DNA from: Macrostomum lignano
Taxonomy: Eukaryota
Assembly (NCBI GenBank): GCA_002269645.1
Contig: NIVC01000734.1
Span: 62,001-126,000 of the forward strand
Direction of reading: 5' to 3'
DNA: 64,000 bases
The notes under the pieces are model-generated. The model was not told the origin of the DNA, searched no databases, and saw only the letters and a list, made by a program, of their open reading frames with translations. This document shows positions 9,689 to 64,000 of this stretch, piece after piece; within the stretch, counting starts at the first letter, position 1, and each line of letters opens with the position of its first letter. A program made the position numbers and the translations under genes.

Positions 9689-12600
9689 TCTGGGGCCAAA
9701 GTCAGTTAGTCAGTTAGTCAGCCAAAATTCCTGTGACGGTTGTAGCTAACTTTGCAGACTTTTTTCTACTAGCCCTTAAGACTTATGTGAACCAAATTTT
9801 ACCAAATAAAAGTACACATGAAAGACTAATTTTTGTGCATTTTTACAATAGTAGGTCTTACAGGAAAGCCAAGAAAAAACTTTTTAGATTTTTTTGTGAC
9901 GGTCATAGCTGTACTACAGTTTTTAAACTTTGAAGTCCAATATTCATTGTCCTATGAACTTTACATTAAAAAGAAAGATTGCAATAAGCTGCAAAAGACA
10001 CACTTAACGTATAGAAAAAAAAGTATGGCTCAATGAAATACCAAACAGCCAGGGAATGAAATTATATTTGTTATAAGAAAAGCATTATATTTAGGTCCGG
10101 GTGAAGGGTATGCACATTGGAAGCAAAAAATTAAATGAAAAAAGGCAGCAGATTAAAAAAAAATAAAAAGGACAAAAATATACATGTTTAACTATATTAT
10201 AAACATAAAGTTGTCATTATTCAACAATTTTTTAATTTTTGTCCTAGTGGTGACCCATTCGTGGAATTGCCCTAAGAGATAAAAGAACAGAGTTGAGAGA
10301 AAAGAGAGGAGAGAGAAAAGAATAGAGGGGAGAAGGAAGAGATGAAAGAAGAAGGGAGAGAAAGGAAAGGAAAGAAGAAAGAAGAGATGAGAGGAGAGAA
10401 GAGACCAGAGTTGAGAGAAAAGAAAGAAAACAAAAGAGAATATCTAAGGGACATAGGGGGAGGCAGAGGTAGAGGCCAGAGTTTGCCTTATATTCTGCAC
10501 AGAATCCCAGCTAGGCCTAACAATATATTCATGTTTGTCTCAAATCCTAATTTTACACAAATGTATTCTATTTTACCCTAAATTGAACTCTATCCTAACT
10601 ATTAACAAGTTTTTGTTTGAGTTTGACCTCTGATTTTGAATACATGCAAAAATAGTTCTGGGGATTTGAATTCCCTAGGTTCAAAATCTATAGGTTTCAA
10701 CAGCTTGTATACTGTATACAAGTACAATGACAAAATTGTTCATTAAAAGAACATTAAAGCAGGTTTCCATCACTCTTTCCCTACTTCTCTTCCTTTAATC
10801 TTTTTGTCTAGCAGACAAATTTGTTTGCCAATTTGTACACAGCAGACAAACTTGTGGCAGACGAATTGACTAGCACCTGGAGCATAGGCCATAGGTGTCC
10901 TTATAATTTAGGGCCTAGCCTAACTAGAGCCTAAAAAAAGAATTAAAAAAATTCAGGGAGGGGACAATACAATATAGTGTGCTGTGCTGCTGCTGCATGG
11001 ACTCATTTTCTGGGGGGGGGGGCAGGGGGGCACGTGCCCCTAGCTAGAACCAAAGTTCTCATTGCACATAGGCCTAGTCATAGACACACTAGATGACGAA
11101 ATGACTAGGAACCGGGGCTGTGTAGCCTCTGAGCCCCCCGTCAGTCTGCACTGGCGGAACCGCCACTGCGTGCTTATTGGGATTAGGGATAGGTAAAAAA
11201 TTGATACATAATAATTATATAATTATATTTATAATCATATCTATAAATATAATATACACAAGAAAAATATAGACCTAGTAGTATAGTGTGACAGATTAGT
11301 AATAGTTGATCTGTGTCGTTTAAAATTCCAAATTTTACGTTTACGAAATGAACTGTTACACACTTTGAAGGGAGTGAACAAGGAGCGCGCGCGGCGGGCG
11401 GCCCAGGAGGAAAGGGAGAATCCTTTTCAAAAATTATTAGGTTGAAGTACAAATTTTTTACTTCCTAAAATATTTGTATTAAATAAATTTAAAAAATTAA
11501 GTCTTTTTTAAACTTTTAATGTTTTTGATCATATTCAGAAGCATTTTTAGCTTGCTTTGTTTTACTACGGAAATTTTAAATCCGTTAATGCGTCACGCAG
11601 GCAGGCCTGCCCGCAGCCATAATTGATCCTTACTTCACTTCACTAATTGGCCTGCTTGCTTGACTAGTCCTTGTGCTTGCATGCAGCTTGAATGAGTGAG
11701 TTAGTGAGAGAGTGAATGCATGAACCTTTCGCCTATCATCTTAAAATCGCACCATGAAGGTGAGCATATGGTGCGATTTGGCACCTTGTCTTTGGCGAAA
11801 AAGAAAACCCTGATCCCTACTTGCTGAATCTAGTCCATTTTTGTAATTAGGTAATAACCTTTTTGATAATAACTATTTTGGTGACAGACAACAAGACCTT
11901 GGCTTGGCCTAATATGATATTGTCATATTGATAAAAAATAGCTAATTATTGTTAACATTGTCATTGATATTATTTTTTATTAGGCCTAGTCTTACACTTG
12001 TAAGAACACTAGGCCTAGTCACTAGAGAATTTTTTAGCTTGATCTATCTCTAGCAGAAAAGAATTTTATATAAAACATAAAAAGTAGGCCCCTCTGCCTC
12101 TATTATGTTAGTCAGAGAATAAATAAGTATCATTACAATTTTTATGTCTAAAAGGCCTATAGGCTAGGCCCTAGGCCTATTCTATAAAAAAAAAGTTATG
12201 AAAAAACATATAAGAATGAAGCATATAAAACATTTGTGGTATATTTTTATTTTTGATAATTATAATTTGGCAATCTTTTACTTTACTGCGTTTAATTTTT
12301 TTAATGGTTCTTTTTAAATTTCAGAATATAAAGATGTTAGGAAGATAAAAGGTAAATGTCTAAGTGTTAGGTAAGTCAATTAGTCAGTAATAATGAGCCA
12401 CCCAGTACAGGAAGTGGCCAAACTCCTTTCTAGGAAAGAGCCGGTGCCAGAGATACTCGCTGAGATGCTTTCAAACAGAGCTTTGGAAGTGCCATGCATC
12501 GCAGCACAAGCTCGCATAGCGTGACATCAATGTCACACAGCTCGGCTGCTAGCCTTAGATTGGCCTTGGGCACTGATGTATGCAGATGCAGACATGACAC

Positions 12601-12919: not shown

Positions 12920-14818
12920 TTTAACTAGCTAGCTAAGCCAAGCACTCACACTGTCTTTCTTCTTTTTATGAGCACTTCTTTCATTTAGTGGTACAGTACT
13001 TTAATGCTAGTGTCTATGGCCATTTTTGCTTTTAGCTTTGTACTTTATGCTATTCAACTGAGGGATACATATAATATTCCCCATTAATACTAGCCGAGGT
13101 CAATAAGTGAGGCACAAATGCATTTTTGCCCTAGCACTGGTATAAATGGGGAATATATACCATTTATATATACTATTTCTATTTATATTATAATAAACCA
13201 AATTTAATATATAAGATCATCTTCATAGGTTAGTTTCTGGATTATTGAAATTGATCACTAAAACCCTTTATACCTTTATACCTTTGGTTTTTTTATTTGC
13301 AATGTGAAGTGATAGTGTTATGATAGATAAATAAAAGGGATTAGATTAGAGTGCTTGTCAATTGTTGATTTGCATTTTGATAAAAAAACAACATTTTTGT
13401 CTTATCTCTTTCTCTCTAATGTGGTTTGTCATTAATTTCAATGATTATAAACCAAAGGAATGCCTAATGATTTATATGCATAAATAGAAAGATTTTTTTT
13501 TAGTTAAATTTGTCTAAAAAATATTTTGCCAATTTTTCCAAAAAAGTTATTATTTTAAACATAGTAATAACTGGCCTTGCTATTTTCTTATAAGATAATA
13601 CTAGGCTGTAAGCCAAACTTTTGATGCTCTTTAGCCACAAAAAAAGTAACTTTCCATTTTTAAGTGACTTGTTGAAACCATTTAATTGTACTCGTAGTTA
13701 TCACATTGCATCAAGACCTGGTCTTTGAAGTGAAATTGAAATAAAAAAATGTTGGTTGAAAAAGTAGAGTACATTTTTAATCTTTTTAGCCATTTTGTTT
13801 TTATAGCGGAAGAGTAATAGCATGTTTTGAAAAATGTTAAAAGAAAATGGAGGGGTAAGTGATGCATGTTTTGCATTCAATAAAAATATAACCTAGTTGT
13901 GAATATAAGTAAATTTTAATGATTGTTTGCCTAGAGAGAGTTTGAGTATTAGCCATTTGCACTTTTTCATTGAATTGTATACCATGAGATGGTGAATAAA
14001 TCAGCTGCATTGGTGTTAGATTCTCCTCTAACTGAGGAGTTGAACTTGTTATATCTATAGATCATCGAATATGAATTAATCCACTTTAGATTTGATAAGC
14101 TTCTAACCAATAAACAAATAGGCTTACTGAATCAGTCTTTTATGTTCTAGAATCTAGTTAGCACTATCTTGTGAAAAAGTGATGACTTGTCTAGTCCCAG
14201 TCACCAGTTGATGTTTAAATATATCATAAAGAGATGCCCCCAGTATCAGCAACTGGTATTGATCTTTGGTAGGATTTGACACTAGTGGTAAGTACTTAAT
14301 GTCCTATACTTACCATTTGTTACTTGCTTTACTCATATTCCTAGGCTTTAACAATTCTTCTGCTCAGGGCATATTGTCTCACTCATGGCTGGCAAATCTG
14401 CAAGGACATTTTGGTATTCACAAACAAATCAGTTTGATTTGCCTAGCTTATGTAATAGACTAGGATCTAGGTCAATGAAACAGACAGTTAGGCAACCAGA
14501 TGAAGGCTAACAGAAGCCAGTGTGTTCCCACACAGGTGTTGGGAATCGTTGATCCCAAATTGCACCCCACCTACCAATCTGGCTGTATTGTCGATCATTT
14601 TCCGAGTGCATCTAAAAATAGAATGCCAGAGCGCCGTTGAAAGTAAAGTGAAATCTGAATCTTTCCCCTTTAACCCTAATAGAAGAGATAGGCAGGCTCC
14701 CACGTTTTGCCATGGTAGATATAGATAAATGTGCACCTCTAAATGTACATTGTGAAATCTTTCCTATCCCTAGTCAATGTGCATTTCTTTCCTTCCAGTT
14801 CGACCCTACTATCAAGCA

Positions 14819-50849: not shown

Positions 50850-53800
50850 GCTCTGGCACAATATCAGAGTTTGAGGTGAAACTCGCCAGTTATTGCTCAC
50901 TTTATTCATATATGGCCAAGTGAAATACTTTTAAATGTGGGTTTCGGCTCTCTGTCGAATCTGCGTCCGAATGCTCTAAGTTGAGGCAATAAGCGGCAAG
51001 TCCGACTCAGTGTTTTCCTGCGGTGTTATACCCTCTCTTATGATGTTACTCGTATATTTCAATCTAAGCCACTGATGACGATTCGCTGTATCGTCTATCG
51101 TTTTGATCTATTATATTAACTGATCGTTTTTCGTCGCTACTAAAAATATAATAAACTTGGCCAACTAAGCAAGAAAAAATATATCAGTTTAATTGCATAT
51201 TGGACTGTGCTACTACTTGCATTTTTCTGTTCTCTGTTTGGTCTTGTTCTGCCAAGGACTGCTACGCTGCGCCAGATTAAATTCGTCTCATTTAAATAAA
51301 GGTCTCACCGAGACACTGAATTAATTACGTTAACAATCCCAACAGGTTTATTACTGCATCTGGATTCTGCACTTCAAGGGCTACATCTACTCTACATTCT
51401 ACAATATTGGTTTGGCTATTATCGGAATTGACAACTGTTTAATTTGTCTTCTTCAACTGATTCTGCGATTGCATCTGTTCTACAGCTTGACATCAGGTCT
51501 ACACTAGGTCTAAAACTTGGCATAAGATCAATCAAATCTATTTCCAGGTAAGCCCCTTTTTGCCTGCTGCTAGGGACCGTCTGGCAGATTAGCCTTGCTT
51601 GTGGGTTGCATGCTTGTTCTAGAATTAGGATTTAGGCTATTTTTTTGGTTTTATTAATTTCTCTGCCAGAAATTTCTTTTTTTGTATTTGTGTGTGCTTT
51701 TCTATCTGCTTTCTTCATTTTCCTCTGCATCACTCTCTGTCTTGAGCATTATGTCAACTGAGGCTGGGGAGGAGGCTCTTGGTGCAGCTGATGATAGGGC
51801 TACACCAGCTCCAGGAGAAGTGAAATCTGGCGAATCAATGTCGGATTCACATGATTCACATGTGGGCCTAAATACAGATGAATCATCACATTCAACAAAC
51901 CTTTTACTTGCAAACACACTAGCTTCTCTGCACCGCATGCTAGAGGACCACTAAGTAGTAAAGGAGCAGCAAGGTCAACTGGATAGTGTCCAACATTGTG
52001 TTGCTCCTATGGCTAGTATGGTTCGGTTGTGGCCACCACCACCTTATTCAGCCAATATGAAGTTTGATGTTTGGGAAGCACAATTTTTGGCATACTAATT
52101 ATCTGCCCATCAGGTACCTCCCGAACAACAGTCAGCGATCTTACTTTCCCTCTTGTCGCCAGTGTCAAGAATGACCGTCTAGTATCTTATTCTCACTCAG
52201 CAGGCATGTCAGTAAACCAGGCTGAGCCGCTGCTAAAAGCCAGGTTCTGTCATGGGCTGCGAAACAAGGCATTGGCCGAGAGACTGATTCTGTGGAGTCA
52301 AGAAACACTTGGAGTCTCCTCAGCTGATCTAGTCCAAAAAGCTAAAGGTATGGTGGGGGTGCAGGAGTTGTTGCATCCATTTCCAGCACCAACAGCAGGT
52401 GCAACTGCTAACTTCCGATCAGTTGACCCAGTTAAGGATGCTTTAGAGGCCAGGGTAGCTGAACTTGAAAACATATTGCATCAACAGCAGCAGGTCAGGA
52501 GTCACCAACATGATAACCCACCGCCGACATTCCCAGCGGCCCTGACTTCAACCGCTGTAGGAATTGGTAATCCAGCTTTTGTCAGGCAGGTGAGCCAGCA
52601 ATCTAACCCTATGCAAAGCCAAAACCCCCATCTGCAAAGCCAAGAGCGTGCCACCGCTGCGGGAACACTGATCACCTGGTCGCTGACTGCCCATGTCCGC
52701 CAGCGAATCAGAACAGTGCCAGGGGGCCAAAAGTGGGCCAACATTCTATTAGTACCACATCAGAATTTGGGAGAATTGTTTCTTGGAATCAGAAATACGG
52801 GTTTATCCAGTTAGAACAACTACCAGAGAAGCTGTTTGTTCATCATAGCCAACTTTCGGGCTTGCTGCACCAACTTTCAGAGCACCGCCAGATCATTGGC
52901 ACTAGGGTGCAGTTCCAAAGTCAGGTTGCTTCAGGTCGTGAACATGACCAGGCCTGTTCTGTCACGCAGTGTCAGGATACTTCACAAGTGCAGTGTGGTC
53001 AGGTAAATCCAGTTGAGGACCAATCTTTCGAGTCTAGTTACTTTGTTCAGTTGGTAATCGGGGAGAGCCAACGCGAGTGTTATAAGCCAGCAGGTGATGG
53101 AGCGCCTTGTCTCTGCGAATCCAATTAATAATATCTTCACTTCAAGCCGAAAACATACTACTGCCGCAGCATTCAATGGCTCAACAACTCAGATACTGGG
53201 AGCGCTGAGGTGTGAAGTAACACTAGGGAAGCTAAGCAAGACTCATGTCTTCCTTGTCACCCAAGAGTCGACTGCAGAGGATCTGCTCGAAATCGACTTC
53301 CTTCGAAGTTTCCAGGTTGTGATTGACTTCACCGAAGGCAGAGCCCTTGTTGCAGGTGAAGCTGTCCCACTAGTTGAAGGGGACAAGGGTATCTTCCGTC
53401 TCCGCCGTGTGGTAGCTGGGTGCACCACAGAATTACCACCACAATCCGAAACTTTAGTACCAAGTTGGGTTTTAGACAATGCTCCAAATTTTCAAGGAAT
53501 CATTCAATGCAAAATCTTCAACACCGACACCGAGTGCCTAGTAGCCCGCTCTGTCAACATGTCAAACCAGTCAAACCATGTGCTGGTCCGATTACTTAAC
53601 AGTAGTGACCGGCTAACCAAGATTGAGCGAGGACAGGAAAAAGTATCGTTCCAGGAACTAGGTCAAGACACGGTAGTAGTACAAACAACACTCAATGAAC
53701 AAGACTTCTCTATTGACAACGTTGACAATTTAAATAGCAAGATAGCTAAACTACTACATCCAGATCGGGGTACTACAGCATGGTTAACAAAAAAATTTTC

Positions 53801-54275
53801 GCTTAGACCAGGCAAAACTCACAACAAAGCAGCTGGGTCAAACTCTCCGGTTATTGAATTATTTTATGGGACAAATCTCAGAGCGGAACTGATCTGGGGC
53901 GAACTCGTCTTTACGAGATGCCTATTGAGCTCTCCTATGACCGGGTTAGTGAGACTCCATCGAGTTCGAGATCGTCGGTGACTGTGCCGTCAGATGCTCT
54001 ACCCCAATTGCCCATCGACGGTGAAGCCGCTCCAGTTGCCGTCCAGGAGGAAGAGGAGGCGGGGTCGGCAAGCGCTCAGACTGGTGAGGAACCAGATGGT
54101 GAGGAAAGTCTTGGCGCTGGTACGGAACCAGATACTACCGAATCGCCGATGGCCGAAACCCCCCCCCCCGAATCCTGTCACGTCGCATGATCAGGCGGAT
54201 AGTGAGTCAGCGGCGTCTCCAGAACCTGAGAACCAGGTCTGGGAGGGTGGTGCGCCAACCGAGTCGGTTCAGGGT
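50850..54275 (+). mobile_element. Degenerate, internally deleted Ty3/Gypsy-like retroelement (left arm of palindrome)
   Basis: Gag-like helical region (LLKARFCHGLRNKALAERL); CCHC knuckle CHRCGNTDHLVADC (52649-52690); cold-shock domain (52769-52963); aspartic protease lacking its DxG motif (..EDLLEIDFL); PR-RT spacer; integrase-end-like SPVIELFYGTNLR; terminal RSGRVVRQPSRF (54226-54270). RT, RNase H and integrase core are missing. Confidence 0.75.
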
Positions 54276-54478
54276 GTTCCTGTGCAGCTTATTTAGAAAT
54301 TCACCAGAGACCGTTTTTGCTCTTCCACTGCCGGCAAGAGCCCAAATCGACCTGCAAAGATTTGCCAATGTTATACCAAATAATTTTGAAATCCCAAATA
54401 CTAAAAATAGTGCTTACCTGCTTTGTGCTCTAAAGTTAGCACTAAAAAAATAAATTTTAGAATTTTTTTACTAGACAA

Positions 54479-55361
54479 ATGTCGAAATTACCCACTTATC
54501 GAAAATCGGCGGGCTCAACTGAGCCACCTAGCAAGCGCGCAAGCAATCGTCAGTCCTCGGACTGGACTACTAAAAGTAGTGCTGCTGGCGGATCCTCTAC
54601 GGCCATATCCAATGGTAGAGGCACAACAAGCCGTACGTCAGTGCCCCCGGCCCAAAGACGGCGCTCGTCCGCTGGTCCATCCAGCAAAACAACGCCACCC
54701 ATTGCACCATGCACATTAACACCAGGGTCGGACCACTCGTCGGCACCGAACTCTCCTGTGCTCACCAATCCAGCCGATAGCGTACAACCGGAGGTTATTG
54801 AAATTCCGGCTGACTCTGACTCTAGAGGTACCAACACGGTCCTTGAGGAGCCGGACCAGGTCACTGAGGACCCAGGCGCTGCAGAATCGGACGCTTCCAA
54901 CAGTAACGACGCTGCTGATGATGTCGATGCGGACTCAGTGAGGTACCTCCAGAGCCCCATCGGCTTCCCTGTGCACCCGGACCGAACCGGGGAAAATATC
55001 CAGCGCTACGGCGACGTACTTGAGTACTATCCGAAGCTACTTGAATCTGTATCCAAACAGCTCTATGACCGCCTAATAGCTGACCTATTGCCAAAGGCCG
55101 TCAGGCATCGGCCGCATGAGCAACGTAGGGTGGTATGGTACGGCCCCAGCTACTCGTACTCGGGCGTACCATTAGAGCCCAACCAAAAGTGGCACCCGGC
55201 TGTCGAGGACCTGCGAGATTTCCTGGAGATCAACGCGGACCTCGGCATGCCAAAGTTTAATTCGTGCCTTATAAATTTCTACGAATCAGCGGATGATAAT
55301 ATCCCGTACCACGCCGACAATGAGCCCGAGCTTGGCACCGATCCGTACATCGCCACAGTGT
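54479..55361 (+). CDS. AlkB-family (ALKBH2/3-like) 2OG-Fe(II) dioxygenase, C-terminally truncated, with long low-complexity N-terminus
   Basis: RRVVWYG.SYSYSG, FNSCLINFY and HADNE (HxD at 55310-55318), then IATVS; truncated by the right palindrome arm before the distal His and Arg motifs. Confidence 0.8.
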
Positions 55362-58300
55362 CGGGGGGGGGGTTTCGGCCATCGGCGATTCGGTAGTATC
55401 TGGCTCCGTACCAGCGCCAAGACTTTCCTCACCATCTGGTTCCTCACCAGTCTGAGCGCTTGCCGACCCCGCCTCCTCTTCCTCCTGGACGGCAACTGGA
55501 GCGGCTTCACCGTCGATGGGCAATTGGGGTAGAGCATCTGACGGCACAGTCACCGACGATCTCGAACTCGATGGAGTCTCACTAACCCGGTCATAGGAGA
55601 GCTCAATAGGCATCTCGTAAAGACGAGTTCGCCCCAGATCAGTTCCGCTCTGAGATTTGTCCCATAAAATAATTCAATAACCGGAGAGTTTGACCCAGCT
55701 GCTTTGTTGTGAGTTTTGCCTGGTCTAAGCGAAAATTTTTTTGTTAACCATGCTGTAGTACCCCGATCTGGATGTAGTAGTTTAGCTATCTTGCTATTTA
55801 AATTGTCAACGTTGTCAATAGAGAAGTCTTGTTCATTGAGTGTTGTTTGTACTACTACCGTGTCTTGACCTAGTTCCTGGAACGATACTTTTTCCTGTCC
55901 TCGCTCAATCTTGGTTAGCCGGTCACTACTGTTAAGTAATCGGACCAGCACATGGTTTGACTGGTTTGACATGTCGACAGAGCGGGCTACTAGGCACTCG
56001 GTGTCGGTGTTGAAGATTTTGCATTGAATGATTCCTTGAAAATTTGGAGCATTGTCTAAAACCCAACTTGGTACTAAAGTTTCGGATTGTGGTGGTAATT
56101 CTGTGGTGCACCCAGCTACCACACGGCGGAGACGGAAGATACCCTTGTCCCCTTCAACTAGTGGGACAGCTTCACCTGCAACAAGGGCTCTGCCTTCGGT
56201 GAAGTCAATCACAACCTGGAAACTTCGAAGGAAGTCGATTTCGAGCAGATCCTCTGCAGTCGACTCTTGGGTGACAAGGAAGACATGAGTCTTGCTTAGC
56301 TTCCCTAGTGTTACTTCACACCTCAGCGCTCCCAGTATCTGAGTTGTTGAGCCATTGAATGCTGCGGCAGTAGTATGTTTTCGGCTTGAAGTGAAGATAT
56401 TATTAATTGGATTCGCAGAGACAAGGCGCTCCATCACCTGCTGGCTTATAACACTCGCGTTGGCTCTCCCCGATTACCAACTGAACAAAGTAACTAGACT
56501 CGAAAGATTGGTCCTCAACTGGATTTACCTGACCACACTGCACTTGTGAAGTATCCTGACACTGCGTGACAGAACAGGCCTGGTCATGTTCACGACCTGG
56601 AGCAACCTGACTTTGGAACTGCACCCTAGTGCCAATGATCTGGCGGTGCTCTGCCAGTTGGTGCAGCAAGCCCGAAAGTTGGCTATGATGAACAAACAGC
56701 TTCTCTGGTAGTTGTTCTAACTGGATAAACCCGTATTTCTGATTCCAAGAAACAATTCTCCAAAATTCTGATGTGGTACTAATAGAATGTTGGCCCACTT
56801 TTGGCCCCCTGGCACTGTTCTAATTCGCTGGCGGACATGGGCAGTCAGCGACCAGGTGATCAGTGTTCCCGCAGCGATGGCACGCTCTTGGCTTTGCAGA
56901 TGGGGGTTTTGGCTTTGCATAGGGTTAGATTGCTGGCTCACCTGCCTGACAAAAGCTGGATTACCAATTCCTACAGCGGTTGAAGTCAGGGCCGCTGGGA
57001 ATGTCGGCGGTGGGTTATCATGTTGGTGACTCCTGACCTGCTGCTGTTGATGCAATATGTTTTCAAGTTCAGCTACCCTGGCCTCTAAAGCATCCTTAAC
57101 TGGGTCAACTGATCGGAAGTTAGCAGTTGCACCTGCTGTTGGTGCTGGAAATGGATGCAACAACTCCTGCACCCCCACCATACCTTTAGCTTTTTGGACT
57201 AGATCAGCTGAGGAGACTCCAAGTGTTTCTTGACTCCACAGAATCAGTCTCTCGGCCAATGCCTTGTTTCGCAGCCCATGACAGAACCTGGCTTTTAGCA
57301 GCGGCTCAGCCTGGTTTACTGACATGCCTGCTGAGTGAGAATAAGATACTAGACAGTCATAGAAGTCTAAGATAGTCTCTGTACTATTTTGGACGGCTGC
57401 TATAAGCTCCATATAACTTTTCTGTTGAAGGTTAACATCAGTATAGCGGTTGCGCAGTGCCTAAAGCGCCTTTGAACATGCATTTTTATCAAGCTCATTA
57501 TTGAGGAAAAATTCTTAACACTGGCGACAAGAGGGAAAGTAAAGATGACTGACTGTTGTTCAGGAGGTACCTGATGGGCAGATAATTAGTATGCCAAAAA
57601 TTGTGCTTCCCAAACATCAAACTTCATATTGGCTGAATAAGGTGGTGGTGGCCACAACCGAACCATACTAGCCTTGCTGCTCCTTTACTGCTTAGTGATC
57701 CTCTAGCATGCGGTGCAGAGAAGCTAGTGTGTTTGCAAGTAAGAGGTTTGTTGAATGTGATGATTCATCTGTATTTAGGCCCACATATGAATCATGTGAA
57801 TCCGACATTGATTCGCCAGATTTCACTTCTCCTGGAGCTCGTGTGGCCCTATCATCAGCTGCACCAAGAGCCTCCTCCCCAGCCTCAGTTGACATAATGC
57901 TCAAGACAGAGTGATGCAGAGGAAAATGAAGAAAGCAGATAGAAAAGCACACACAAATACAAAAAAAGAAATTTCTGGCAGAGAAATTAAGAAAACCAAA
58001 AAAATAGCCTAAATCCTACTTCTAGAACAAGCATGCAACCCACAAGCAAGGCTAATCTGCCAGACGGTCCCTAGTAGCAGGCAAAAAGGGGCTTACCTGG
58101 AAATAGATTTGATTGATCTTATGCCAAGTTGTAGACCTAGGTGCCAAGCTGTAGGCCTAGTGTAGACCTGGATGCCAAGCTGTAGAACAGATGCAATCGC
58201 AGACTCAGTTAAAGAAGACAAATTAAACAGTTGTCAATTCCGATAATAGCCAAACCAATATTGTAGAATGTAGAGCAGATGTAGCCCTTGAAGTGCAGAA

Positions 58301-58821
58301 TCCAGATGCAATAATAAACCAGTTGGGATTGTTAACGTAATTAATTCAGTGTCTCGGTGAGACCTTTTTTTAAATGAGACGAATTTAATCTGGCGCAGCG
58401 TAGCAGTCCTTGGCAGAACAAGACCAAACAGAGAACAGAAAAATGCAAGTAGTAGCGCAGTCCAATATGCAATTAAACTGATATATTTTTTCTTGCTTAG
58501 TTGGCCAAGTTTATTATACGAAGTATTTTTTAGTAGCGACGAAAAACGATCAGTTAATATAATAGATCAAAACGATAGATGATACAGCGAATTGTCATCA
58601 GTGGCTTAGATTGAAATATACGAGTAACATCATAAGAGAGGGTATAACACCGCAGGAAAACACTGAGTCGGGCTTGCCGCTTATTGCCTCAGCTTAGAGC
58701 ATTCGGACGCAGATTCGACAGAGAGCCGAAACCCACATTTAAAAGTATTTCACTTGGCCATATGAATAAAGCGAGCAATAACTGGTGAGTTTCACCTCAA
58801 ACTCTGAGATTGTGCAAGAGC
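55361..58821 (-). mobile_element. Second copy of the degenerate Gypsy-like element (right arm of palindrome)
   Basis: Near-identical reverse complement of 50850-54171 with the same frameshifts, plus arm-specific indels. Confidence 0.8.
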
Positions 58822-59112
58822 ACGAACTCAAGATATATTCCGAACGCATTAAAAACAAGCGAAGCTAGACTCACCAAAATCCTTATGGACGAAGTTTTTC
58901 CAAAGGCCTTTCATCAGGTATCCGGCGGCAAACCTGAAGCTAGGAAGGTAGTGTGGTACGGTCCAGAGTACACCTACGGTGGCACAACGATTGAGGCCAA
59001 CGATGCTTGGCACCCCGTAGTGACTCACTTAGCTTCCTGGCTGCACGTTGAGCTTAAGCTTCTATTGCCAAACTCGTGCCTGATCAACTTCTACAAGGAT
59101 AGCACAGTTTCG
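58822..59112 (+). pseudogene. Second AlkB-like fragment (paralogous to 54479-55361), lacking HxD
   Basis: ARKVVWYGPEYTYGG..WHPVV..PNSCLINFYKDSTVS; fused in frame to the downstream LINE sequence. Confidence 0.7.
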
Positions 59113-62100
59113 GCGGCACAAATACGGCGAGACCCCACAACCGAAGTCACCAAGGCGCCCAGGCCAAGAGCGGAGAGCCAGTCAAGAGTAAGAAAGGACG
59201 AGGACAAAGACGATATCGAGACAGGCAGGAGCGACAGCCCTGATAGCAGCAGCGAGGAAGCGCCGCCGGAACCGACGCTGGGAATCAGAGAGAGCCACCC
59301 CAGGAGCAGAAGGCCGGAGAACTCACCACTACACCCGCGAGGTAAAGATCAGCGAGACCCCGCCCTCCGCAACCGAGGGGCTGAATCAAGCTCCCGGGAA
59401 GAGGACACGCTGACCAGAGCACCCCCCACGGAGGAGGAGCCGGAAAGCGGCCCCAGCGAGAACACCACGGGTCGGCAGCTAGGAGAGGCGAGCAAGCGCA
59501 CAGCACCAGCCCGGAAGGCCCCCAGGTTGTGGACCACCCAGGAGGACAAAGTGGCGGAGAAGGACGCTTCCAATCCGACGCGCGGAAAAGAGAAAGGCTC
59601 CACAGAAGCGTGCCGCCAGTGTCACAGGAAAATACGCAGCGACCATAGAGGGCTACAGTGCCTGGGCTGCGGGTCGGTCAGCCACCGTGCATGCACCGGC
59701 CTTACCAGATTGCGGCGCGAGCAGCTGATCAGCTGGACCTGCCAAAACTGCTGCAGAAGCAGTACCGGTAAGGCGGAATATCAGGCCTCCAAGCCCAGCG
59801 GGACGCCACAGAGTGCAGAGAACAGCAGGCAGAAGGCGGGTCGGTGCGCCATCTGCCAGAAGCACAGGCGGAAGGGCCAAGGCACGGAGTGCAGCGGCTG
59901 CGCTAAGAAAATCCTCCGGCTCCGGCGCTCATACGAGGAAGCAACGAGACAAAATAAAGCACCTCGGATGGACCTGCGTCGAATTTCAGCAGCAGCCCAA
60001 AACGGGCAACAGCCATAAGCCGGAGCAGAAGGAGCAGGACACCAGGGACATAGAATAAGAAGCCCACAGGGCAGAGGACGCGAAACTCTCCTTTCTGCAA
60101 TGGAACTGCGATCATGTGAGGGCCAAAAAACCGGAACTAAGAGACTTCCTCCAACGTCACCACATTGACGCCGCGATGATTCAAGAAACCAAACTTCGCA
60201 GCGAAGACGGAGTTATTTCTATACCCGGCTACACCGCAATCAGAAAAGACCGAACGCGCACGGACGCTGATTAAAGAAGGCATCAGGTACGAAAAGGTCG
60301 AGCTCATTCAACGAACCGACGGAGAACACCTAGAACTACTCTGCGTAAAAGTCTTCCCTCCAGGACAGACGGAAGCCATTGGCCTGGCCAACGTGTACAT
60401 ACCACCTCAATCTTCGTCCCCGTTGAACCACAGAGAGCTCCACAATCTCCCCAGCGGAAACAACTGGATCATTGCCGGCGAACTCAATGCGCACCACGAG
60501 CTCTGGGACAACAACTGCCCCAGAGACTCCAGAGGGGAGGCATTCGTTGAATGGATGGACGACCACCTGTTCACGGCGCTCAACGACGGAGAGGCCACGC
60601 GAAACAGCAGAGATGGGAAATCGAGCACAGCACCAGACATCACAATGGTCCCAGCGGCCGACAGTCACCTCTGGAGCTGGACAGTGCAGAAAGAAATGAG
60701 CTCCGATCATCTGCCGATCATAATCCGGAGAGCGGGTACAGAAACAGAGGCGGCGGCAGAAAGAAAAGTGATATGCTGGAACTGGAGGAAGGCAAACTGG
60801 GAAAAATACCGAGAGGCGGTGGCTAACACGTTGACAGAACCAGGTCGGAGGCAAGATACCATCGAGCAGGAAGAAGGCAGAATCAAGCGGGCAATTCAGG
60901 AAGCAGCGCGGAAGCACGTCGGCACCATCGCCAGGAAAACACGTAACATAGATTTCGTCGAAGAGGACATCCTGGAAATGATGGAGAAGAAAGACAATGT
61001 CCGCGCGGCAGAAGGTATCAAATCGGAAGCCTGGAAATGGAAGGCCCTGGACCAAGAGATCAAGACAACCATGGCGGACCGCAAAAAAAGAACAATGGAG
61101 GCACCACCTGGACAAACATGCGAGCAACAGCAAGATGTGGACGCTGGTCAGCCAGTTAAGCAGAGCCAGGGCAAAAAGAGAGGAAGATCAAATCATGGAA
61201 CACGAGGGAAGGAAGTACAAATCGGACAGAGCGAAGGCGAACATCATCGCTAAAACATACGCTAAGGTCAGTACCTACCAAATAAAAGCAAACCACCGCT
61301 GGGCAAAAAAGCAAGCTAACGCAAGGCCCGGGATCCTGGAATGGCAACAGCCAAAGCCCGCGGACGACGAGGAGATCTCAGCGGAAGAGATTAGAGAGGC
61401 GCTAGATAAGACGGACAGCAACAGGGCGGCAGGCATGGATCACATCCACCCAAGCTGCTCAAGGAGCTGCCGAAGGCAGCCCTGGAAGAAGTCCGGAATC
61501 TGTTCATCTGTTCCGGAGCAAGCCTACGCACCATCGAACTGGCGAATGGCCCGCATTATCCCGCTGCTCAAAAAGGGAAAACCGGCCAGCGAAATAGGAT
61601 CGTACAGACCGGTAAGCCTGACCTCGTGCCTGGGCAAGCTGATGGAACGCGTGTTGGCAGCCAGAATCAGATCCACGCTCGAAGCCAACGGAACACTCAG
61701 CGACAACTAAGCGGGTTTCCGAGCAGGTCGGTCAGCCGAGGACCAGGTGCTCCGCCTCACCCAAGCCATTGACGATGCCTTCCAGAACAGAGAAAAAACC
61801 ATCCTGGCCCTGTTCCACTTCGAAAGGGCCTTCGACAAAGTGTGGAGAGACGGGCTCATCATTAAGCTGCTCAACACGGGTATCGGAGTCAAGCTTATTC
61901 TCTGGATCCAGGCCTTGCTGATGGACCGCAAAGCATGCGCCAGAGTAGGCAACGTCGATAGCAGGCGCGAAAGATTTCGGCAGGGTCTCCCGCAAGGATC
62001 CGTGCTATCTCCCCTGCTCTTTATTATCTACATCAACGACCTCCTCAAAAAACAGGAAAATATCGAAGGGCTAGAAGTCAGCGGCTACGCTGACGACCTA

Positions 62101-63850
62101 GCCACCTGGTCTTGCAACAGATCGCCAGATGTTGCGCTCGAAAGGCAGCAGCTAGCCACCAAGACAATCCAAGACTGGAGCGAAAAGTGGCTGATGCCGA
62201 TCTCAGTGCCCAAATGCACGCTCACCATCTTCAGCAACGACCCGGCCACGACGATACCTGCCGGGAAGGTCAAACTGAACAACCAGGAGATCCGGTGGGA
62301 AGAGCACCCTAAATTCCTGGGCCTCACGTATGACAGGAAGCTCAGTTTCAGCAAGCACGCGGAGACGGTAGTGACTAGCTGCAGGAAGAACCTAAACTTA
62401 CTCCGTAAACTAGCCGGTAGCGACTGGGGATGGCAACCGGAACTGGTACGTGACACCTACAAAGCCACAATCCGCAGCAACATCACGTACGGAGCTTGTG
62501 CTTGGACGCCTTGGATTTCCGCCCCAATTTGGCGGAGGCTCGAGGTGCTACAAAGGGAAGCTCAAAGAATCATCACCGGAGCGACGGACACAACACCGGT
62601 GGAAGCCCTGCGCTGAGAGAGCCAGCTGCAAGACCTCAAACCGCTGTGCACGGTTATCTGGGGCACCAAGCTCGACCGCTGGCTCCGACTGCCAGAGAAA
62701 TCCCGGAGGTACAAGACCGCAACCAAAAATGTACCGACAAGACTGAAGCGGATCGGTTGGCGCAAGGCAGCCCAGGAGGCGCTGAGGGAAGCCGGGTTCC
62801 TCGATCTGCCGAGAATCAAGGACGAGGAGGACGCCACACCCTGGAGCGGATGGCGTAAGGCCCTCATCGACGCCGAGGCAGACAGGCAAATAACGATGGA
62901 AGGCAACAAGTGCATGGCCAAGAGAAGGCTCCATGCCAACTGCCCGAAACCGGACTACACACTGTACACCAACGGCTTGGTCAAAAACGGCAGAGGAAGA
63001 AGCGGAGTGGCGATTTTCACCGGCGAAGCGGAGAAGGAGCCTCCGATCCAAACCATCGCCAGACCGGCGGGGACATCGCCTCCTCGTTACAAGCGGAGCT
63101 CGGGGCCCTGGCGGCGGCCCTAGAGTGGCTAGAGAGCAGGCAGGACTGGCAAACGGCCCAAATTGCCTCGGATAGCAAGAGCGGACTCCTGGCCATCAAA
63201 GGCTACGGCAGAAACCCCGTGGCGATCAACACCCGGAAGACGCTCGCGAAGATGATCAGCAGAGACAAGCAGCTTGCGCTGACATGGATACCAGCGCACT
63301 GCGGCCATCCCGGAAACGAGGCCGCCGACATCATAGCAGGCAACGCGACGGAGCTCGCCCAAGGTCAGACGCCGGTGCTAGCCAGCCTGGTCCAAGCACG
63401 CCTAGCAGCCAAAATGGCCAAAAAGCAAGGAAAAGACCGGCAGTGGGCTCACGTCCGAAGCAAGAACACCTACGGCACCGTCAGGTCTGCGCGCCACCCA
63501 CAGTTCAAGTCCCGGACCGAGGCGGTCAGCTTCTGTCTTTTTCGGACGGGCCACTCGCTGGAGCTCGAAGCCTATCAACTAAGGTTGAAAAAGGACACCG
63601 ACGGGCTCTGCTGGGAGTGTGGCCTGGAAGAAGAGACGGTGGTCCACGTCATCGAAGAGTGCCCCGCCACCGAGCTAGCCAGAAGGCAATACGGGCTCTT
63701 GCTTATGACGCACACGAACGAGCTACCCGAGCCGATCCTGAGCTACTGGAACTGGTACAGGTGCCGCCCCAAATGGAAGGAGAAGCTCGACGAGGTGTTA
63801 AATACGGCTCAGCTATAACAACAACAACAACAACAGCAACAGCAGCAGCA
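59113..63850 (+). mobile_element. Degenerate RNase H-bearing non-LTR retrotransposon (Ingi/I-superfamily-like): PHD-PHD-APE-RT-RNase H-CCHC, probably 5'-truncated
   Basis: PHD CRQC..CLGC..SHRAC..WTCQNC; APE FLQWNCD, IQETK, IAGELNAHH, SDHLP; RT QGSVLSP and YADD; RNase H AELGAL, SDSKS, WIPAHCGHPGNEAAD; zinc finger CWEC..ETVVHVIEEC. Stop codon runs into a (CAA)n(CAG)n tail at 63817-63856. Several in-frame stops (60056, 61708, 62614) and frameshifts. Confidence 0.9.
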
Positions 63851-63926
63851 GCAGCACAGCCCCCACACCTCCTCGCGGTGTGCTGTGGACACCCGCCCTC
63901 TCCCTGGGCTGGTGACGAAGGGGGGG
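63851..63926 (+). ncRNA. HDV-like self-cleaving ribozyme at the 5' end of a downstream Ingi-like element
   Basis: P1 GCAGCAC(63851-57)/GTGCTGT(63880-86) with G.U at the cleavage site; P3 ACC/GGT with L3 TCCTCGC; P1.1 CC/GG(63887-88); P4 CACC-GCCC/GGGC-GGTG; J4/2 A-C(63916)-GAA; P2 CCCCCAC/GGGGGGG with one mismatch. Confidence 0.88.
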
Positions 63927-63933
63927 CATACCT

Positions 63934-64000
63934 ATGGACTACTGCTGGGACTGCAAGAAGTGGAAGCTGATCAAAGCCGGAGACGTCGAGAGCAACCCGG
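63934..64000 (+). CDS. Start of LINE ORF with a 2A/StopGo peptide (MDYCWDCKKWKLIKAGDVESNPG...), cut by the window edge
   Basis: Exact D-V-E-S-N-P-G motif in frame with an ATG 8 nt after the ribozyme; the final Pro codon lies outside the window. Confidence 0.8.
   Translation, partial: MDYCWDCKKWKLIKAGDVESNP

What the first reader, a model, noticed from the sequence alone, without database searches (positions are those of the whole stretch)
63817..63926. HDV-like ribozyme whose P1 strand is built from the upstream element's microsatellite tail
Seen: a full nested double pseudoknot with P3/L3 ACC-TCCTCGC-GGT matching the HDV antigenomic ribozyme, a G.U pair at the cleavage site (cut between 63850 and 63851) and catalytic C63916. 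The 5' P1 strand GCAGCAC is the last part of the (CAA)n(CAG)n tail that begins at the stop codon of the preceding LINE. Established: HDV-like ribozymes process the 5' ends of R2, L1Tc/Ingi and other LINEs from read-through transcripts. Inference: head-to-tail elements in which the ribozyme cuts tandem co-transcripts into unit-length RNAs, and the element may target CAG/CAA repeats or its own tail because these complete or match P1.
Basis: partly seen in the sequence, partly recalled or inferred. Interest (0 to 1): 0.85.

Follow-up and report, generated by a model that had tools for sequence, protein, structure and literature searches.

The report
HDV-like ribozyme heading a LINE
A small self-cutting RNA motif of the hepatitis-delta type sits directly behind the repeat tail of one broken jumping gene (LINE) and just before the start of the next; this arrangement is already known from other LINEs, and the idea that the neighbour's tail builds part of the ribozyme could not be tested.

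Summary
Bases 63851-63924 (+) carry every helix of an HDV-type nested double pseudoknot in canonical order. P1 is 7 bp and opens with a G.U pair, and the 13-nt P3-L3-P3' core is identical to the HDV ribozyme. P1.1, P2 and P4 are present, and J4/2 reads ACGAA with C63916. A strict descriptor hits once in the window and 0 times in 400 shuffles. Three Rfam HDV-type models align full length in register, but all score below their gathering thresholds.

The motif lies between the (CAA)n(CAG)n tail of a 5'-truncated, frameshifted LINE and an ORF that starts 10 nt downstream. That LINE encodes PHD, APE, RT and RNase H. The ORF opens with a 2A peptide (GDVESNPG). Relatives (~40% RT identity) share the 2A-PHD-APE-RT-RNH plan and (CAA)4-6 tails.

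The best reading is a 5'-processing ribozyme of the downstream LINE, as in R2 and L1Tc, so a new member of a known kind.

The tail-coupling idea is untested. No second copy was found anywhere. The P1 strand lies 3' of the cut, so it travels with the downstream RNA. Relatives' tails carry no (CAG)n tract and sit at varied sites. R2 and Perere-3 are precedents for flank-derived P1 strands.

The parts
58822..63818 (+). Upstream LINE copy, 5'-truncated and broken. ORF1 remnant 58810-60018 has an AlkB-like remnant and a PHD finger. APE is in 60393-61253. RT is split between 60997-61710 and 61747-62616. RNase H plus a C-terminal Cys/His motif is in 62910-63818. There are frame changes between APE and RT and between RT and RNase H, and a stop at 61708-10.
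   Evidence: ORF list. Pfam: PHD, Exo_endo_phos_2, RVT_1, RNase_H. The 5' junction at 58821/58822 comes from comparison with the inverted copy of the flank.
63816..63818 (+). TAA stop codon of the upstream LINE, directly abutting the tail.
63819..63839 (+). (CAA)5 CAG CAA: the microsatellite 3' tail of the upstream LINE.
   Evidence: Sequence. Relatives end in (CAA)4-6 at or within a few nt of the stop codon.
63840..63850 (+). (CAG)n tract 5' of the predicted cut. Its owner is unresolved: tail, target or 5' junction filler. The full (CAG)5 runs 63840-63854 and overlaps P1.
   Evidence: Sequence. Upstream CAG registers pair with the P1 3' strand at only 6/7 positions.
63851..63857 (+). P1 5' strand GCAGCAC. 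The predicted cleavage is between A63850 and G63851.
   Evidence: 7/7 pairs with 63880-86, and this is the only such register. The HDV-F-prausnitzii model alignment starts at 63851.
63860..63864 (+). P2 5' strand CCCCC. J1/2 is AG 63858-59, and the linker AC is 63865-66.
63867..63879 (+). P3 (ACC/GGT) enclosing L3 TCCTCGC. C63871 and C63872 form P1.1.
   Evidence: Identical 13-mer in the HDV ribozyme. Unique in the window.
63880..63888 (+). P1 3' strand GTGCTGT (63880-86), then GG (63887-88), the 3' strand of P1.1.
63890..63914 (+). P4 hairpin: CACC-C-GCCC, loop TCTCCCT, GGGC-T-GGTG.
   Evidence: -14.3 kcal/mol on its own
63915..63919 (+). J4/2 ACGAA with the presumed catalytic C63916. HDV has GCUAA at this position.
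63920..63926 (+). P2 3' strand: GGGGG 63920-24 within a run of seven G.
63934..64000 (+). Start of the downstream ORF: MDYCWDCKKWKLIKAGDVESNPG, a 2A (StopGo)-type peptide. It is cut by the window end.
   Evidence: Read (ATG at 63934-36). Relatives L002, L003, L126 and L129 have RAGDVExNPGP at the N-terminus of their PHD-APE-RT-RNH ORFs.

Best explanation
Bases 63851-63924 encode an HDV-like self-cleaving ribozyme that forms the 5' end of a LINE. That LINE's first ORF (ATG 63934) opens with a 2A peptide.

This copy lies head-to-tail directly behind the (CAA)n(CAG)n tail of a 5'-truncated, frameshifted LINE with PHD, APE, RT and RNase H domains.

Inferred mechanism: transcription entering from upstream, through the dead copy or any host promoter, yields a co-transcript. 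The ribozyme folds co-transcriptionally and cuts between A63850 and G63851. This releases the downstream element's RNA with a 5'-OH at G63851. The upstream fragment is left ending inside its microsatellite tail.

The whole ribozyme, including the P1 strand GCAGCAC, stays on the released RNA and is copied into every full-length daughter. The folded ribozyme ends 10 nt before the AUG, so it may also support cap-independent initiation, as reported for R2.

Shown here: the fold, the core identity, and the LINE and 2A context. Inferred: cleavage activity, the read-through source of the transcript, and any role in translation.
For: - All five helices and both junctions are in canonical order, with a G.U pair at the cut and C63916 in J4/2.
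- The 13-nt P3-L3-P3' is identical to the HDV ribozyme, and J4/2 ACGAA parallels its GCTAA.
- The strict descriptor gives 1 hit in the window and 0 in 400 shuffles.
- Three independent Rfam HDV-type models align end to end at 63847-63930, one starting exactly at 63851, with E = 0.038 over 4227 families. That is roughly 2e-3 per family when scaled to the whole window.
- The motif is on the same strand as the LINE ORFs and lies between a LINE tail and a 2A-initiated ORF.
- The 2A-PHD-APE-RT-RNH plan is confirmed in relatives.
- HDV-like ribozymes at LINE 5' ends are established for R2 (PMC3774820) and L1Tc (PMC3185411). L1Tc and Ingi also carry a 2A (PMC3708506).
Against: - All Rfam scores are well below the gathering thresholds.
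- No second copy exists in any searchable source, so there is no covariation support.
- The ~40% relatives have no detectable ribozyme, and one has only ~28 nt of 5' UTR.
- A competing nested hairpin (CACACC/GGUGUG plus CACAGC/GCUGUG) is the MFE of the isolated RNA at -31.2 kcal/mol.
- The upstream (CAG)n can pair 6/7 with the P1 3' strand, and with CUGCUG at 63941-46. Either could slow folding.
- Only 22 codons of the downstream element are visible, so its LINE identity is inferred.
Confidence: 0.75

Rival explanations
1. Tail-coupled P1. The ribozyme-defined 5' end GCAGCAC matches CAG-type repeats. After reverse transcription, the cDNA 3' end anneals to a CAG/CAA tract, such as another copy's tail, to prime second-strand synthesis. 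The family would then preferentially land behind its own tails and build head-to-tail arrays that the ribozyme cuts into unit lengths.
For: - GCAGCAC is the exact in-phase continuation of (CAG)5.
- The two elements abut with no intervening flank.
- In R2, target-derived sequence forms P1 and is proposed to form a cDNA/target heteroduplex (PMC3774820).
- In Perere-3, TSD sequence contributes to the ribozyme's P1 (PMC8501958).
- 3 of the 15 (CAA)n runs listed in relatives are followed by CAGC.
Against: - This is a single junction. In-phase continuity has a 1-in-3 chance.
- P1 lies 3' of the cut, so the ribozyme is complete without any flank.
- Relatives' tails are pure (CAA)4-6. None is followed by a (CAG)n tract or a 2A ORF, and their flanks differ. 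L003 has an ordinary TSD, TACAATGTGT, at an AT-rich site.
- Those relatives lack the ribozyme, so they test the idea only weakly.
Confidence: 0.2
2. One-event origin. The pair is a single insertion copied from an uncleaved dimeric read-through RNA of a tandem donor, with reverse transcription stopping inside the upstream unit's ORF1. The junction would then say nothing about targeting at this site.
For: - The upstream unit is 5'-truncated at 58822, exactly where the host repeat ends, and the empty-site copy continues with unrelated sequence.
- No TSD is visible between the two units.
Against: - The idea only moves the question to the donor array.
- The 3' end of the downstream unit lies outside the window, so the flanking TSD cannot be checked.
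- It requires the ribozyme to have failed to cleave.
Confidence: 0.2
3. Inactive relic or chance look-alike. The motif resembles an HDV ribozyme but does not cleave in this copy, because of mutations or competing folds, or it was never a ribozyme.
For: - Rfam scores are sub-threshold.
- A competing nested MFE exists, and z-scores are near 0.
- The neighbouring copy is decayed.
- The loose descriptor alone is not significant.
Against: - Every position known to matter is intact: G.U, 7-bp P1 without mismatch, L3, P1.1, and C in J4/2 followed by NAA.
- The strict descriptor gives 0 hits in 400 shuffles.
- The location is exactly where LINE ribozymes occur.
Confidence: 0.12

Closest known systems
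HDV ribozyme (the version used in reverse-genetics plasmids; antigenomic by my recollection)
   Same: The P3-L3-P3' sequence ACCUCCUCGCGGU is identical. Both have a 7-bp P1 with a G.U pair at the cut and GG forming P1.1. J4/2 follows the pattern xC-N-A-A before a G-rich P2 strand.
   Different: The P1, P2 and P4 sequences are unrelated. P4 is shorter. There are two extra nt between P2 and P3. The context is genomic LINE DNA, not a circular RNA satellite. The score is below the Rfam RF00094 gathering threshold.
R2 retrotransposon ribozyme (Eickbush lab; PMC3774820)
   Same: An HDV-like ribozyme at the 5' end of a non-LTR element that processes a co-transcript. In many R2 lineages, the P1 5' strand is upstream target (28S) sequence that stays on the RNA and is proposed to anneal to the target. 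This is the closest precedent for the tail/P1 idea.
   Different: R2 is an REL-endonuclease, site-specific rDNA element with one ORF and no 2A. Here the element is APE-type with RNase H, has a microsatellite tail, and site specificity is not shown.
L1Tc / Ingi L1TcRz (PMC3185411, PMC4035085, PMC3708506)
   Same: An APE-type LINE with an HDV-like ribozyme in its first ~77 nt, followed by an ORF with an N-terminal 2A peptide. Upstream sequence modulates cleavage.
   Different: The trypanosomatid Pr77 is also an internal promoter and has a different sequence. L1Tc has a poly(A) tail. The clade of the window element was not determined.
Perere-3 twister-variant ribozyme of Schistosoma mansoni (PMC8501958)
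   Same: A 5'-terminal ribozyme of a non-site-specific LINE, in which flanking (TSD) sequence contributes the 5' strand of the terminal P1 helix.
   Different: A different ribozyme class (twister variant), and the flank-derived strand lies differently relative to the cut.
2A-PHD-APE LINEs of invertebrates (Crack, CR1 and Ingi families in PMC3708506)
   Same: The N-terminal 2A-like peptide is followed by a PHD finger and APE-RT. Relatives L002, L003, L126 and L129 show the same plan.
   Different: That paper describes no ribozyme (0 occurrences of the word). Here the 2A starts only 17 residues from the Met, and the ORF1 region also holds an AlkB-like remnant.

Membership tests
HDV-like self-cleaving ribozymes (structural class) | Nested double pseudoknot with P1, P2, P3, P1.1 and P4 in canonical 5'-3' order | tested here: met
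   All helices were located and every pair is standard.
HDV-like self-cleaving ribozymes (structural class) | About 7-bp P1 without mismatch, starting at the cut with G+1 in a G.U (or G-C) pair, directly 3' of P3 | tested here: met
   G63851.U63886 plus six Watson-Crick pairs. It is the only 7/7 register.
HDV-like self-cleaving ribozymes (structural class) | Conserved L3 (UCCUCGC) supplying two C for P1.1 with the GG after P1 | tested here: met
   Identical to the HDV ribozyme core. C63871/72 pair with G63888/87.
HDV-like self-cleaving ribozymes (structural class) | Catalytic cytosine in J4/2, followed by about 3 nt and then the P2 3' strand | tested here: met
   ACGAA at 63915-19, with C63916, then GGGGG. 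The catalytic role itself is inferred.
HDV-like self-cleaving ribozymes (structural class) | Site-specific, divalent-ion-dependent self-cleavage giving a 5'-OH and a 2',3'-cyclic phosphate | not testable with these tools
   Needs an in vitro transcription and cleavage assay.
HDV-like self-cleaving ribozymes (structural class) | Compensatory changes in the helices among homologues | tested here: inconclusive
   No homologous copy was found in the window or in metagenome, genome or viral contigs.
Rfam families RF00094 HDV_ribozyme, RF02682 HDV-F-prausnitzii, RF01787 drz-agam-1 | Covariance-model score at or above the curated gathering threshold | tested here: not met
   20.9 against 50, 22.3 against 44, and 17.9 against 37 bits. 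It is not a member of these narrow sequence families. The alignments are nonetheless full length and in register.
LINE 5'-processing ribozymes (R2 / L1Tc type) | Lies at the 5' end of a non-LTR element, on the same strand, upstream of its first ORF | tested here: met
   It ends 10 nt before an ATG that opens a 2A peptide, the N-terminal signature of related PHD-APE-RT-RNH LINEs. The rest of the element is outside the window.
LINE 5'-processing ribozymes (R2 / L1Tc type) | 5' ends of full-length genomic copies or transcripts coincide with the cleavage site | not tested
   No other copies and no transcript data were available.
Target-derived P1 (R2 upstream-cleaving type / Perere-3 type) | The P1 5' strand is flank or target sequence rather than element sequence, with recurrent insertion next to that sequence | tested here: inconclusive
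   P1 continues the (CAG)n tract in phase. This is only one junction, and the (CAA)n runs listed in relatives show no (CAG)n tract and no tandem partner.
2A / StopGo peptides | D(V/I)ExNPGP motif with a suitable upstream tract | tested here: inconclusive
   GDVESNPG is present at 63979-64000. The final Pro codon lies beyond the window end.

The most novel reading that the evidence does not exclude
The ribozyme-defined RNA 5' end (GCAGCAC...) is deliberately microsatellite-like. Its cDNA complement would anneal to CAG/CAA tracts, above all the family's own 3' tails, to prime second-strand synthesis. A non-rDNA, APE-type LINE would thereby build self-perpetuating head-to-tail arrays, in which one ribozyme cut makes both the 3' end of the upstream RNA (inside its tail) and the 5' end of the downstream RNA. 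This would be R2's target-heteroduplex logic transferred to a microsatellite-tailed LINE.
Probability: 0.15. Interest if true: 0.6.

Novelty: new member of a known kind. Interest (0 to 1): 0.35.

Why it matters
If active, this adds a further LINE lineage (2A-PHD-APE-RT-RNase H with a (CAA)n tail) to those that rely on an HDV-like ribozyme and read-through transcription instead of their own promoter. Like L1Tc, it also pairs the ribozyme with an N-terminal 2A peptide. That is useful for annotation and for ribozyme surveys, but it is not surprising. The tail/P1 coupling would be more interesting. It would link 3'-tail sequence, 5'-end definition and insertion preference in one mechanism, and it would explain tandem LINE arrays. 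The present evidence for it is one junction.

Tried and rejected
- Rfam at gathering thresholds over the whole window found nothing.
- A search for a second copy in the window found none, either by core pattern with up to 2 mismatches or by self-BLAST.
- An exact 22-nt core scan of metagenome, genome and viral contigs found 0 hits each.
- A degenerate core scan of metagenomes returned 120 loci, almost all chance. Only L023 and L091 look like compact HDV-like ribozymes, and neither is related to this family.
- The ORF1 protein search found no homologues. The RNase H and RT searches found only relatives of 45% identity or less over most of the query.
- Ten relative loci were fetched and scanned with my descriptor, and four of them also with Rfam. 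No ribozyme was found.
- My loose descriptor turned out to be non-significant on its own, and its second window hit at 13139 is an AT-rich chance match.
- MFE z-scores were uninformative for a pseudoknot.
- A look-alike 16-mer, GCAGCAGCAGCACAGC, at about 10981-10996 (-) is not followed by a ribozyme.
- In L130, 'CAGCAC ... GTGCTGTG' follows the tail. By eye (from the output) it does not give an HDV fold: no P3/L3 precedes the GTGCTGT.
- The Ruminski et al. 2011 paper could not be read. Statements about ribozyme-assisted translation rest on my own knowledge of that paper.

Full report
**1. Observation**

The sequence at 63816-64000 reads: TAA stop (63816-18), (CAA)5 CAG CAA (CAG)5 CAC AG, then CCCCC AC ACC TCCTCGC GGT GTGCTGT GG A [CACCCGCCCTCTCCCTGGGCTGGTG] ACGAA GGGGGGG CATACCT ATG.

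Every element of an HDV-type nested double pseudoknot is present in the canonical order:
- P1: 63851-57 pairs with 63880-86. It is 7 bp, and the first pair is G.U.
- J1/2: AG.
- P2: 63860-64 pairs with 63920-24.
- P3: 63867-69 pairs with 63877-79.
- L3: TCCTCGC.
- P1.1: C63871/72 pairs with G63888/87.
- P4: 63890-63914.
- J4/2: ACGAA, with C63916.

The 13-nt P3-L3-P3' string is identical to the HDV ribozyme sequence printed in PMC11055280. That ribozyme's junction GCTAA-GGGAG parallels ACGAA-GGGGG here.

**2. Is it more than chance?**

A purely structural descriptor that I wrote is not selective. It gives 2 hits in the window, one of them an AT-rich chance hit at 13139, and 0.58 hits per dinucleotide-shuffled window.

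Adding the a-priori core TCCTCG and a P4 of at most 60 nt leaves only the 63867 site in the window, and 0 hits in 400 shuffles.

Rfam gives nothing at gathering thresholds. In a focused search, three HDV-type models align full length and in register. HDV-F-prausnitzii scores 22.3 bits (E 0.038), starting exactly at 63851. HDV_ribozyme scores 20.9 bits and drz-agam-1 scores 17.9 bits. A control 5' region from a relative gives no HDV hit under the same settings.

Only the register starting at 63851 gives 7/7 P1 pairs. The CAG registers upstream give 6/7, with a mismatch next to P3.

Nested MFE folding is uninformative, with z near 0. The nested subset P1+P3+P4 is -24.5 kcal/mol, against an alternative nested MFE of -31.2 kcal/mol. 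A competing hairpin therefore exists.

**3. Context**

The upstream ORFs carry PHD, APE (Exo_endo_phos_2), RT and RNase H domains on the + strand. They are broken by at least two frame changes and a stop.

The copy is 5'-truncated at 58822. There a host repeat ends, and its inverted twin at 50850 continues with unrelated sequence.

Ten nt after the ribozyme, an ORF starts: MDYCWDCKKWKLIKAGDVESNPG. This is a 2A-type peptide, cut by the window end.

**4. Relatives**

The ORF1 search found nothing. The RNase H and RT searches found only relatives of 45% identity or less over most of the query, mostly in one ENA assembly. I fetched ten loci.

L002, L003, L126 and L129 carry RA(G/R)DVExNPGP, then PHD-like fingers, APE, RT and RNase H. 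A (CAA)5-6 tail follows a few nt after the stop. The window's downstream ORF therefore has the N-terminal signature of this LINE group, and the (CAA)n tail is a group trait.

L003 is full length with the TSD TACAATGTGT. It has only ~28 nt of 5' UTR and no HDV hit.

Of the 15 (CAA)n runs listed in the relatives, none is followed by a (CAG)n tract or by a 2A ORF, and their flanks differ.

No second copy of the ribozyme exists in the window or in three collections. Covariation and 5'-junction surveys were therefore impossible.

**5. Mechanism**

The best-supported reading is a 5'-processing HDV-like ribozyme of the downstream LINE. A read-through transcript is cut 5' of G63851. The released RNA carries the complete ribozyme, followed almost at once by the AUG and the 2A peptide. 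The upstream fragment ends in its tail.

Cleavage, the read-through source and any translational role are inferred. The translational role draws on R2 work by Ruminski et al. 2011, which I could not read here. L1Tc combines the same two features, and its upstream sequence modulates cleavage (PMC3185411; PMC3708506). That is relevant here because (CAG)n can pair with the P1 3' strand and with CUGCUG at 63941-46.

**6. The tail-coupling claim**

As a description it is correct: GCAGCAC continues (CAG)5 in phase.

As a mechanism it is untested. The P1 5' strand is 3' of the cut, so it belongs to the downstream RNA and needs no flank.

Three histories fit the junction:
- The downstream copy inserted at the tail.
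- The truncated copy inserted into a CAG tract just 5' of the ribozyme. Several relatives' tails abut CAGC, which hints at CA(A/G) primer microhomology.
- A single insertion from an uncleaved dimer RNA.

The window ends too early to see the TSD that would decide between them.

Precedents make the idea reasonable but not new in kind. R2 ribozymes often use upstream 28S target sequence as P1, with a proposed cDNA/target heteroduplex (PMC3774820). Perere-3 twister variants use TSD sequence in P1 (PMC8501958).

**7. Verdict**

This is a well-formed, very probably genuine HDV-like ribozyme at a LINE 5' end, and a new member of a known kind. It does not reach the thresholds of the three narrow Rfam families. 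The tail-coupled P1 remains a hypothesis (about 0.15-0.2) that a copy survey in the source genome would settle.

Noticed in passing
window 54479-55396 (+) and 58834-59097 (+): An ALKBH3-like 2OG-Fe(II) oxygenase ORF (Pfam PF13532, E 4.6e-11; PDB ALKBH3, E 2e-15). A 42%-identical remnant of the same domain lies in frame at the N-terminus of the LINE's ORF1, upstream of its PHD finger (weak Pfam hit, E 0.0085). An AlkB-type domain inside a LINE ORF1 was not found in the literature search, which returned only orchid Ty3/Gypsy elements.
   Followed up: partly
window 50850-54168 and 55363-58821: A large palindrome. The inner ~2 kb of the arms is 99.6% identical and the outer 1.3 kb is 92% identical. 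A 1.2-kb spacer (54169-55362) holds most of the AlkB ORF. The LINE's 5' junction sits exactly at the outer end of the right arm, and the left arm continues with TGATCTGG....
   Followed up: partly
window 63840-63854 with 63941-63955: In the MFE fold of 63800-63960, the (CAG)n tract pairs with CUGCUGGGACUGC inside the first codons of the downstream ORF. This is a possible competitor of ribozyme folding, or it may be coincidental.
   Followed up: no
L002 7840-7872, L003 8046-12578, L126 ~7686, L129 ~7851 (ENA sample ERZ26859072): A LINE group with an N-terminal 2A (RAGDVExNPGP), PHD fingers, APE, RT, RNase H and a (CAA)5-6 tail. L003 is full length with the TSD TACAATGTGT and a ~28-nt 5' UTR, and has no detectable ribozyme.
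   Followed up: partly
L023 458-522 (-) and L091 1126-1195 (+): Two compact, well-formed HDV-like ribozyme candidates in JGI metagenome contigs, found by the degenerate core scan. L023 has the same J4/2 ACGAA as the window motif. Their contexts were not examined.
   Followed up: no
window ~10981-10996 (-): GCAGCAGCAGCACAGC is identical to the 16 nt at 63845-63860, but is followed by unrelated AT-rich sequence. This is probably microsatellite coincidence.
   Followed up: partly
window 1-50000: The window is packed with minisatellite arrays (periods 14-151, many over 500 bp) and has few conventional ORFs. The source organism was not identified.
   Followed up: no
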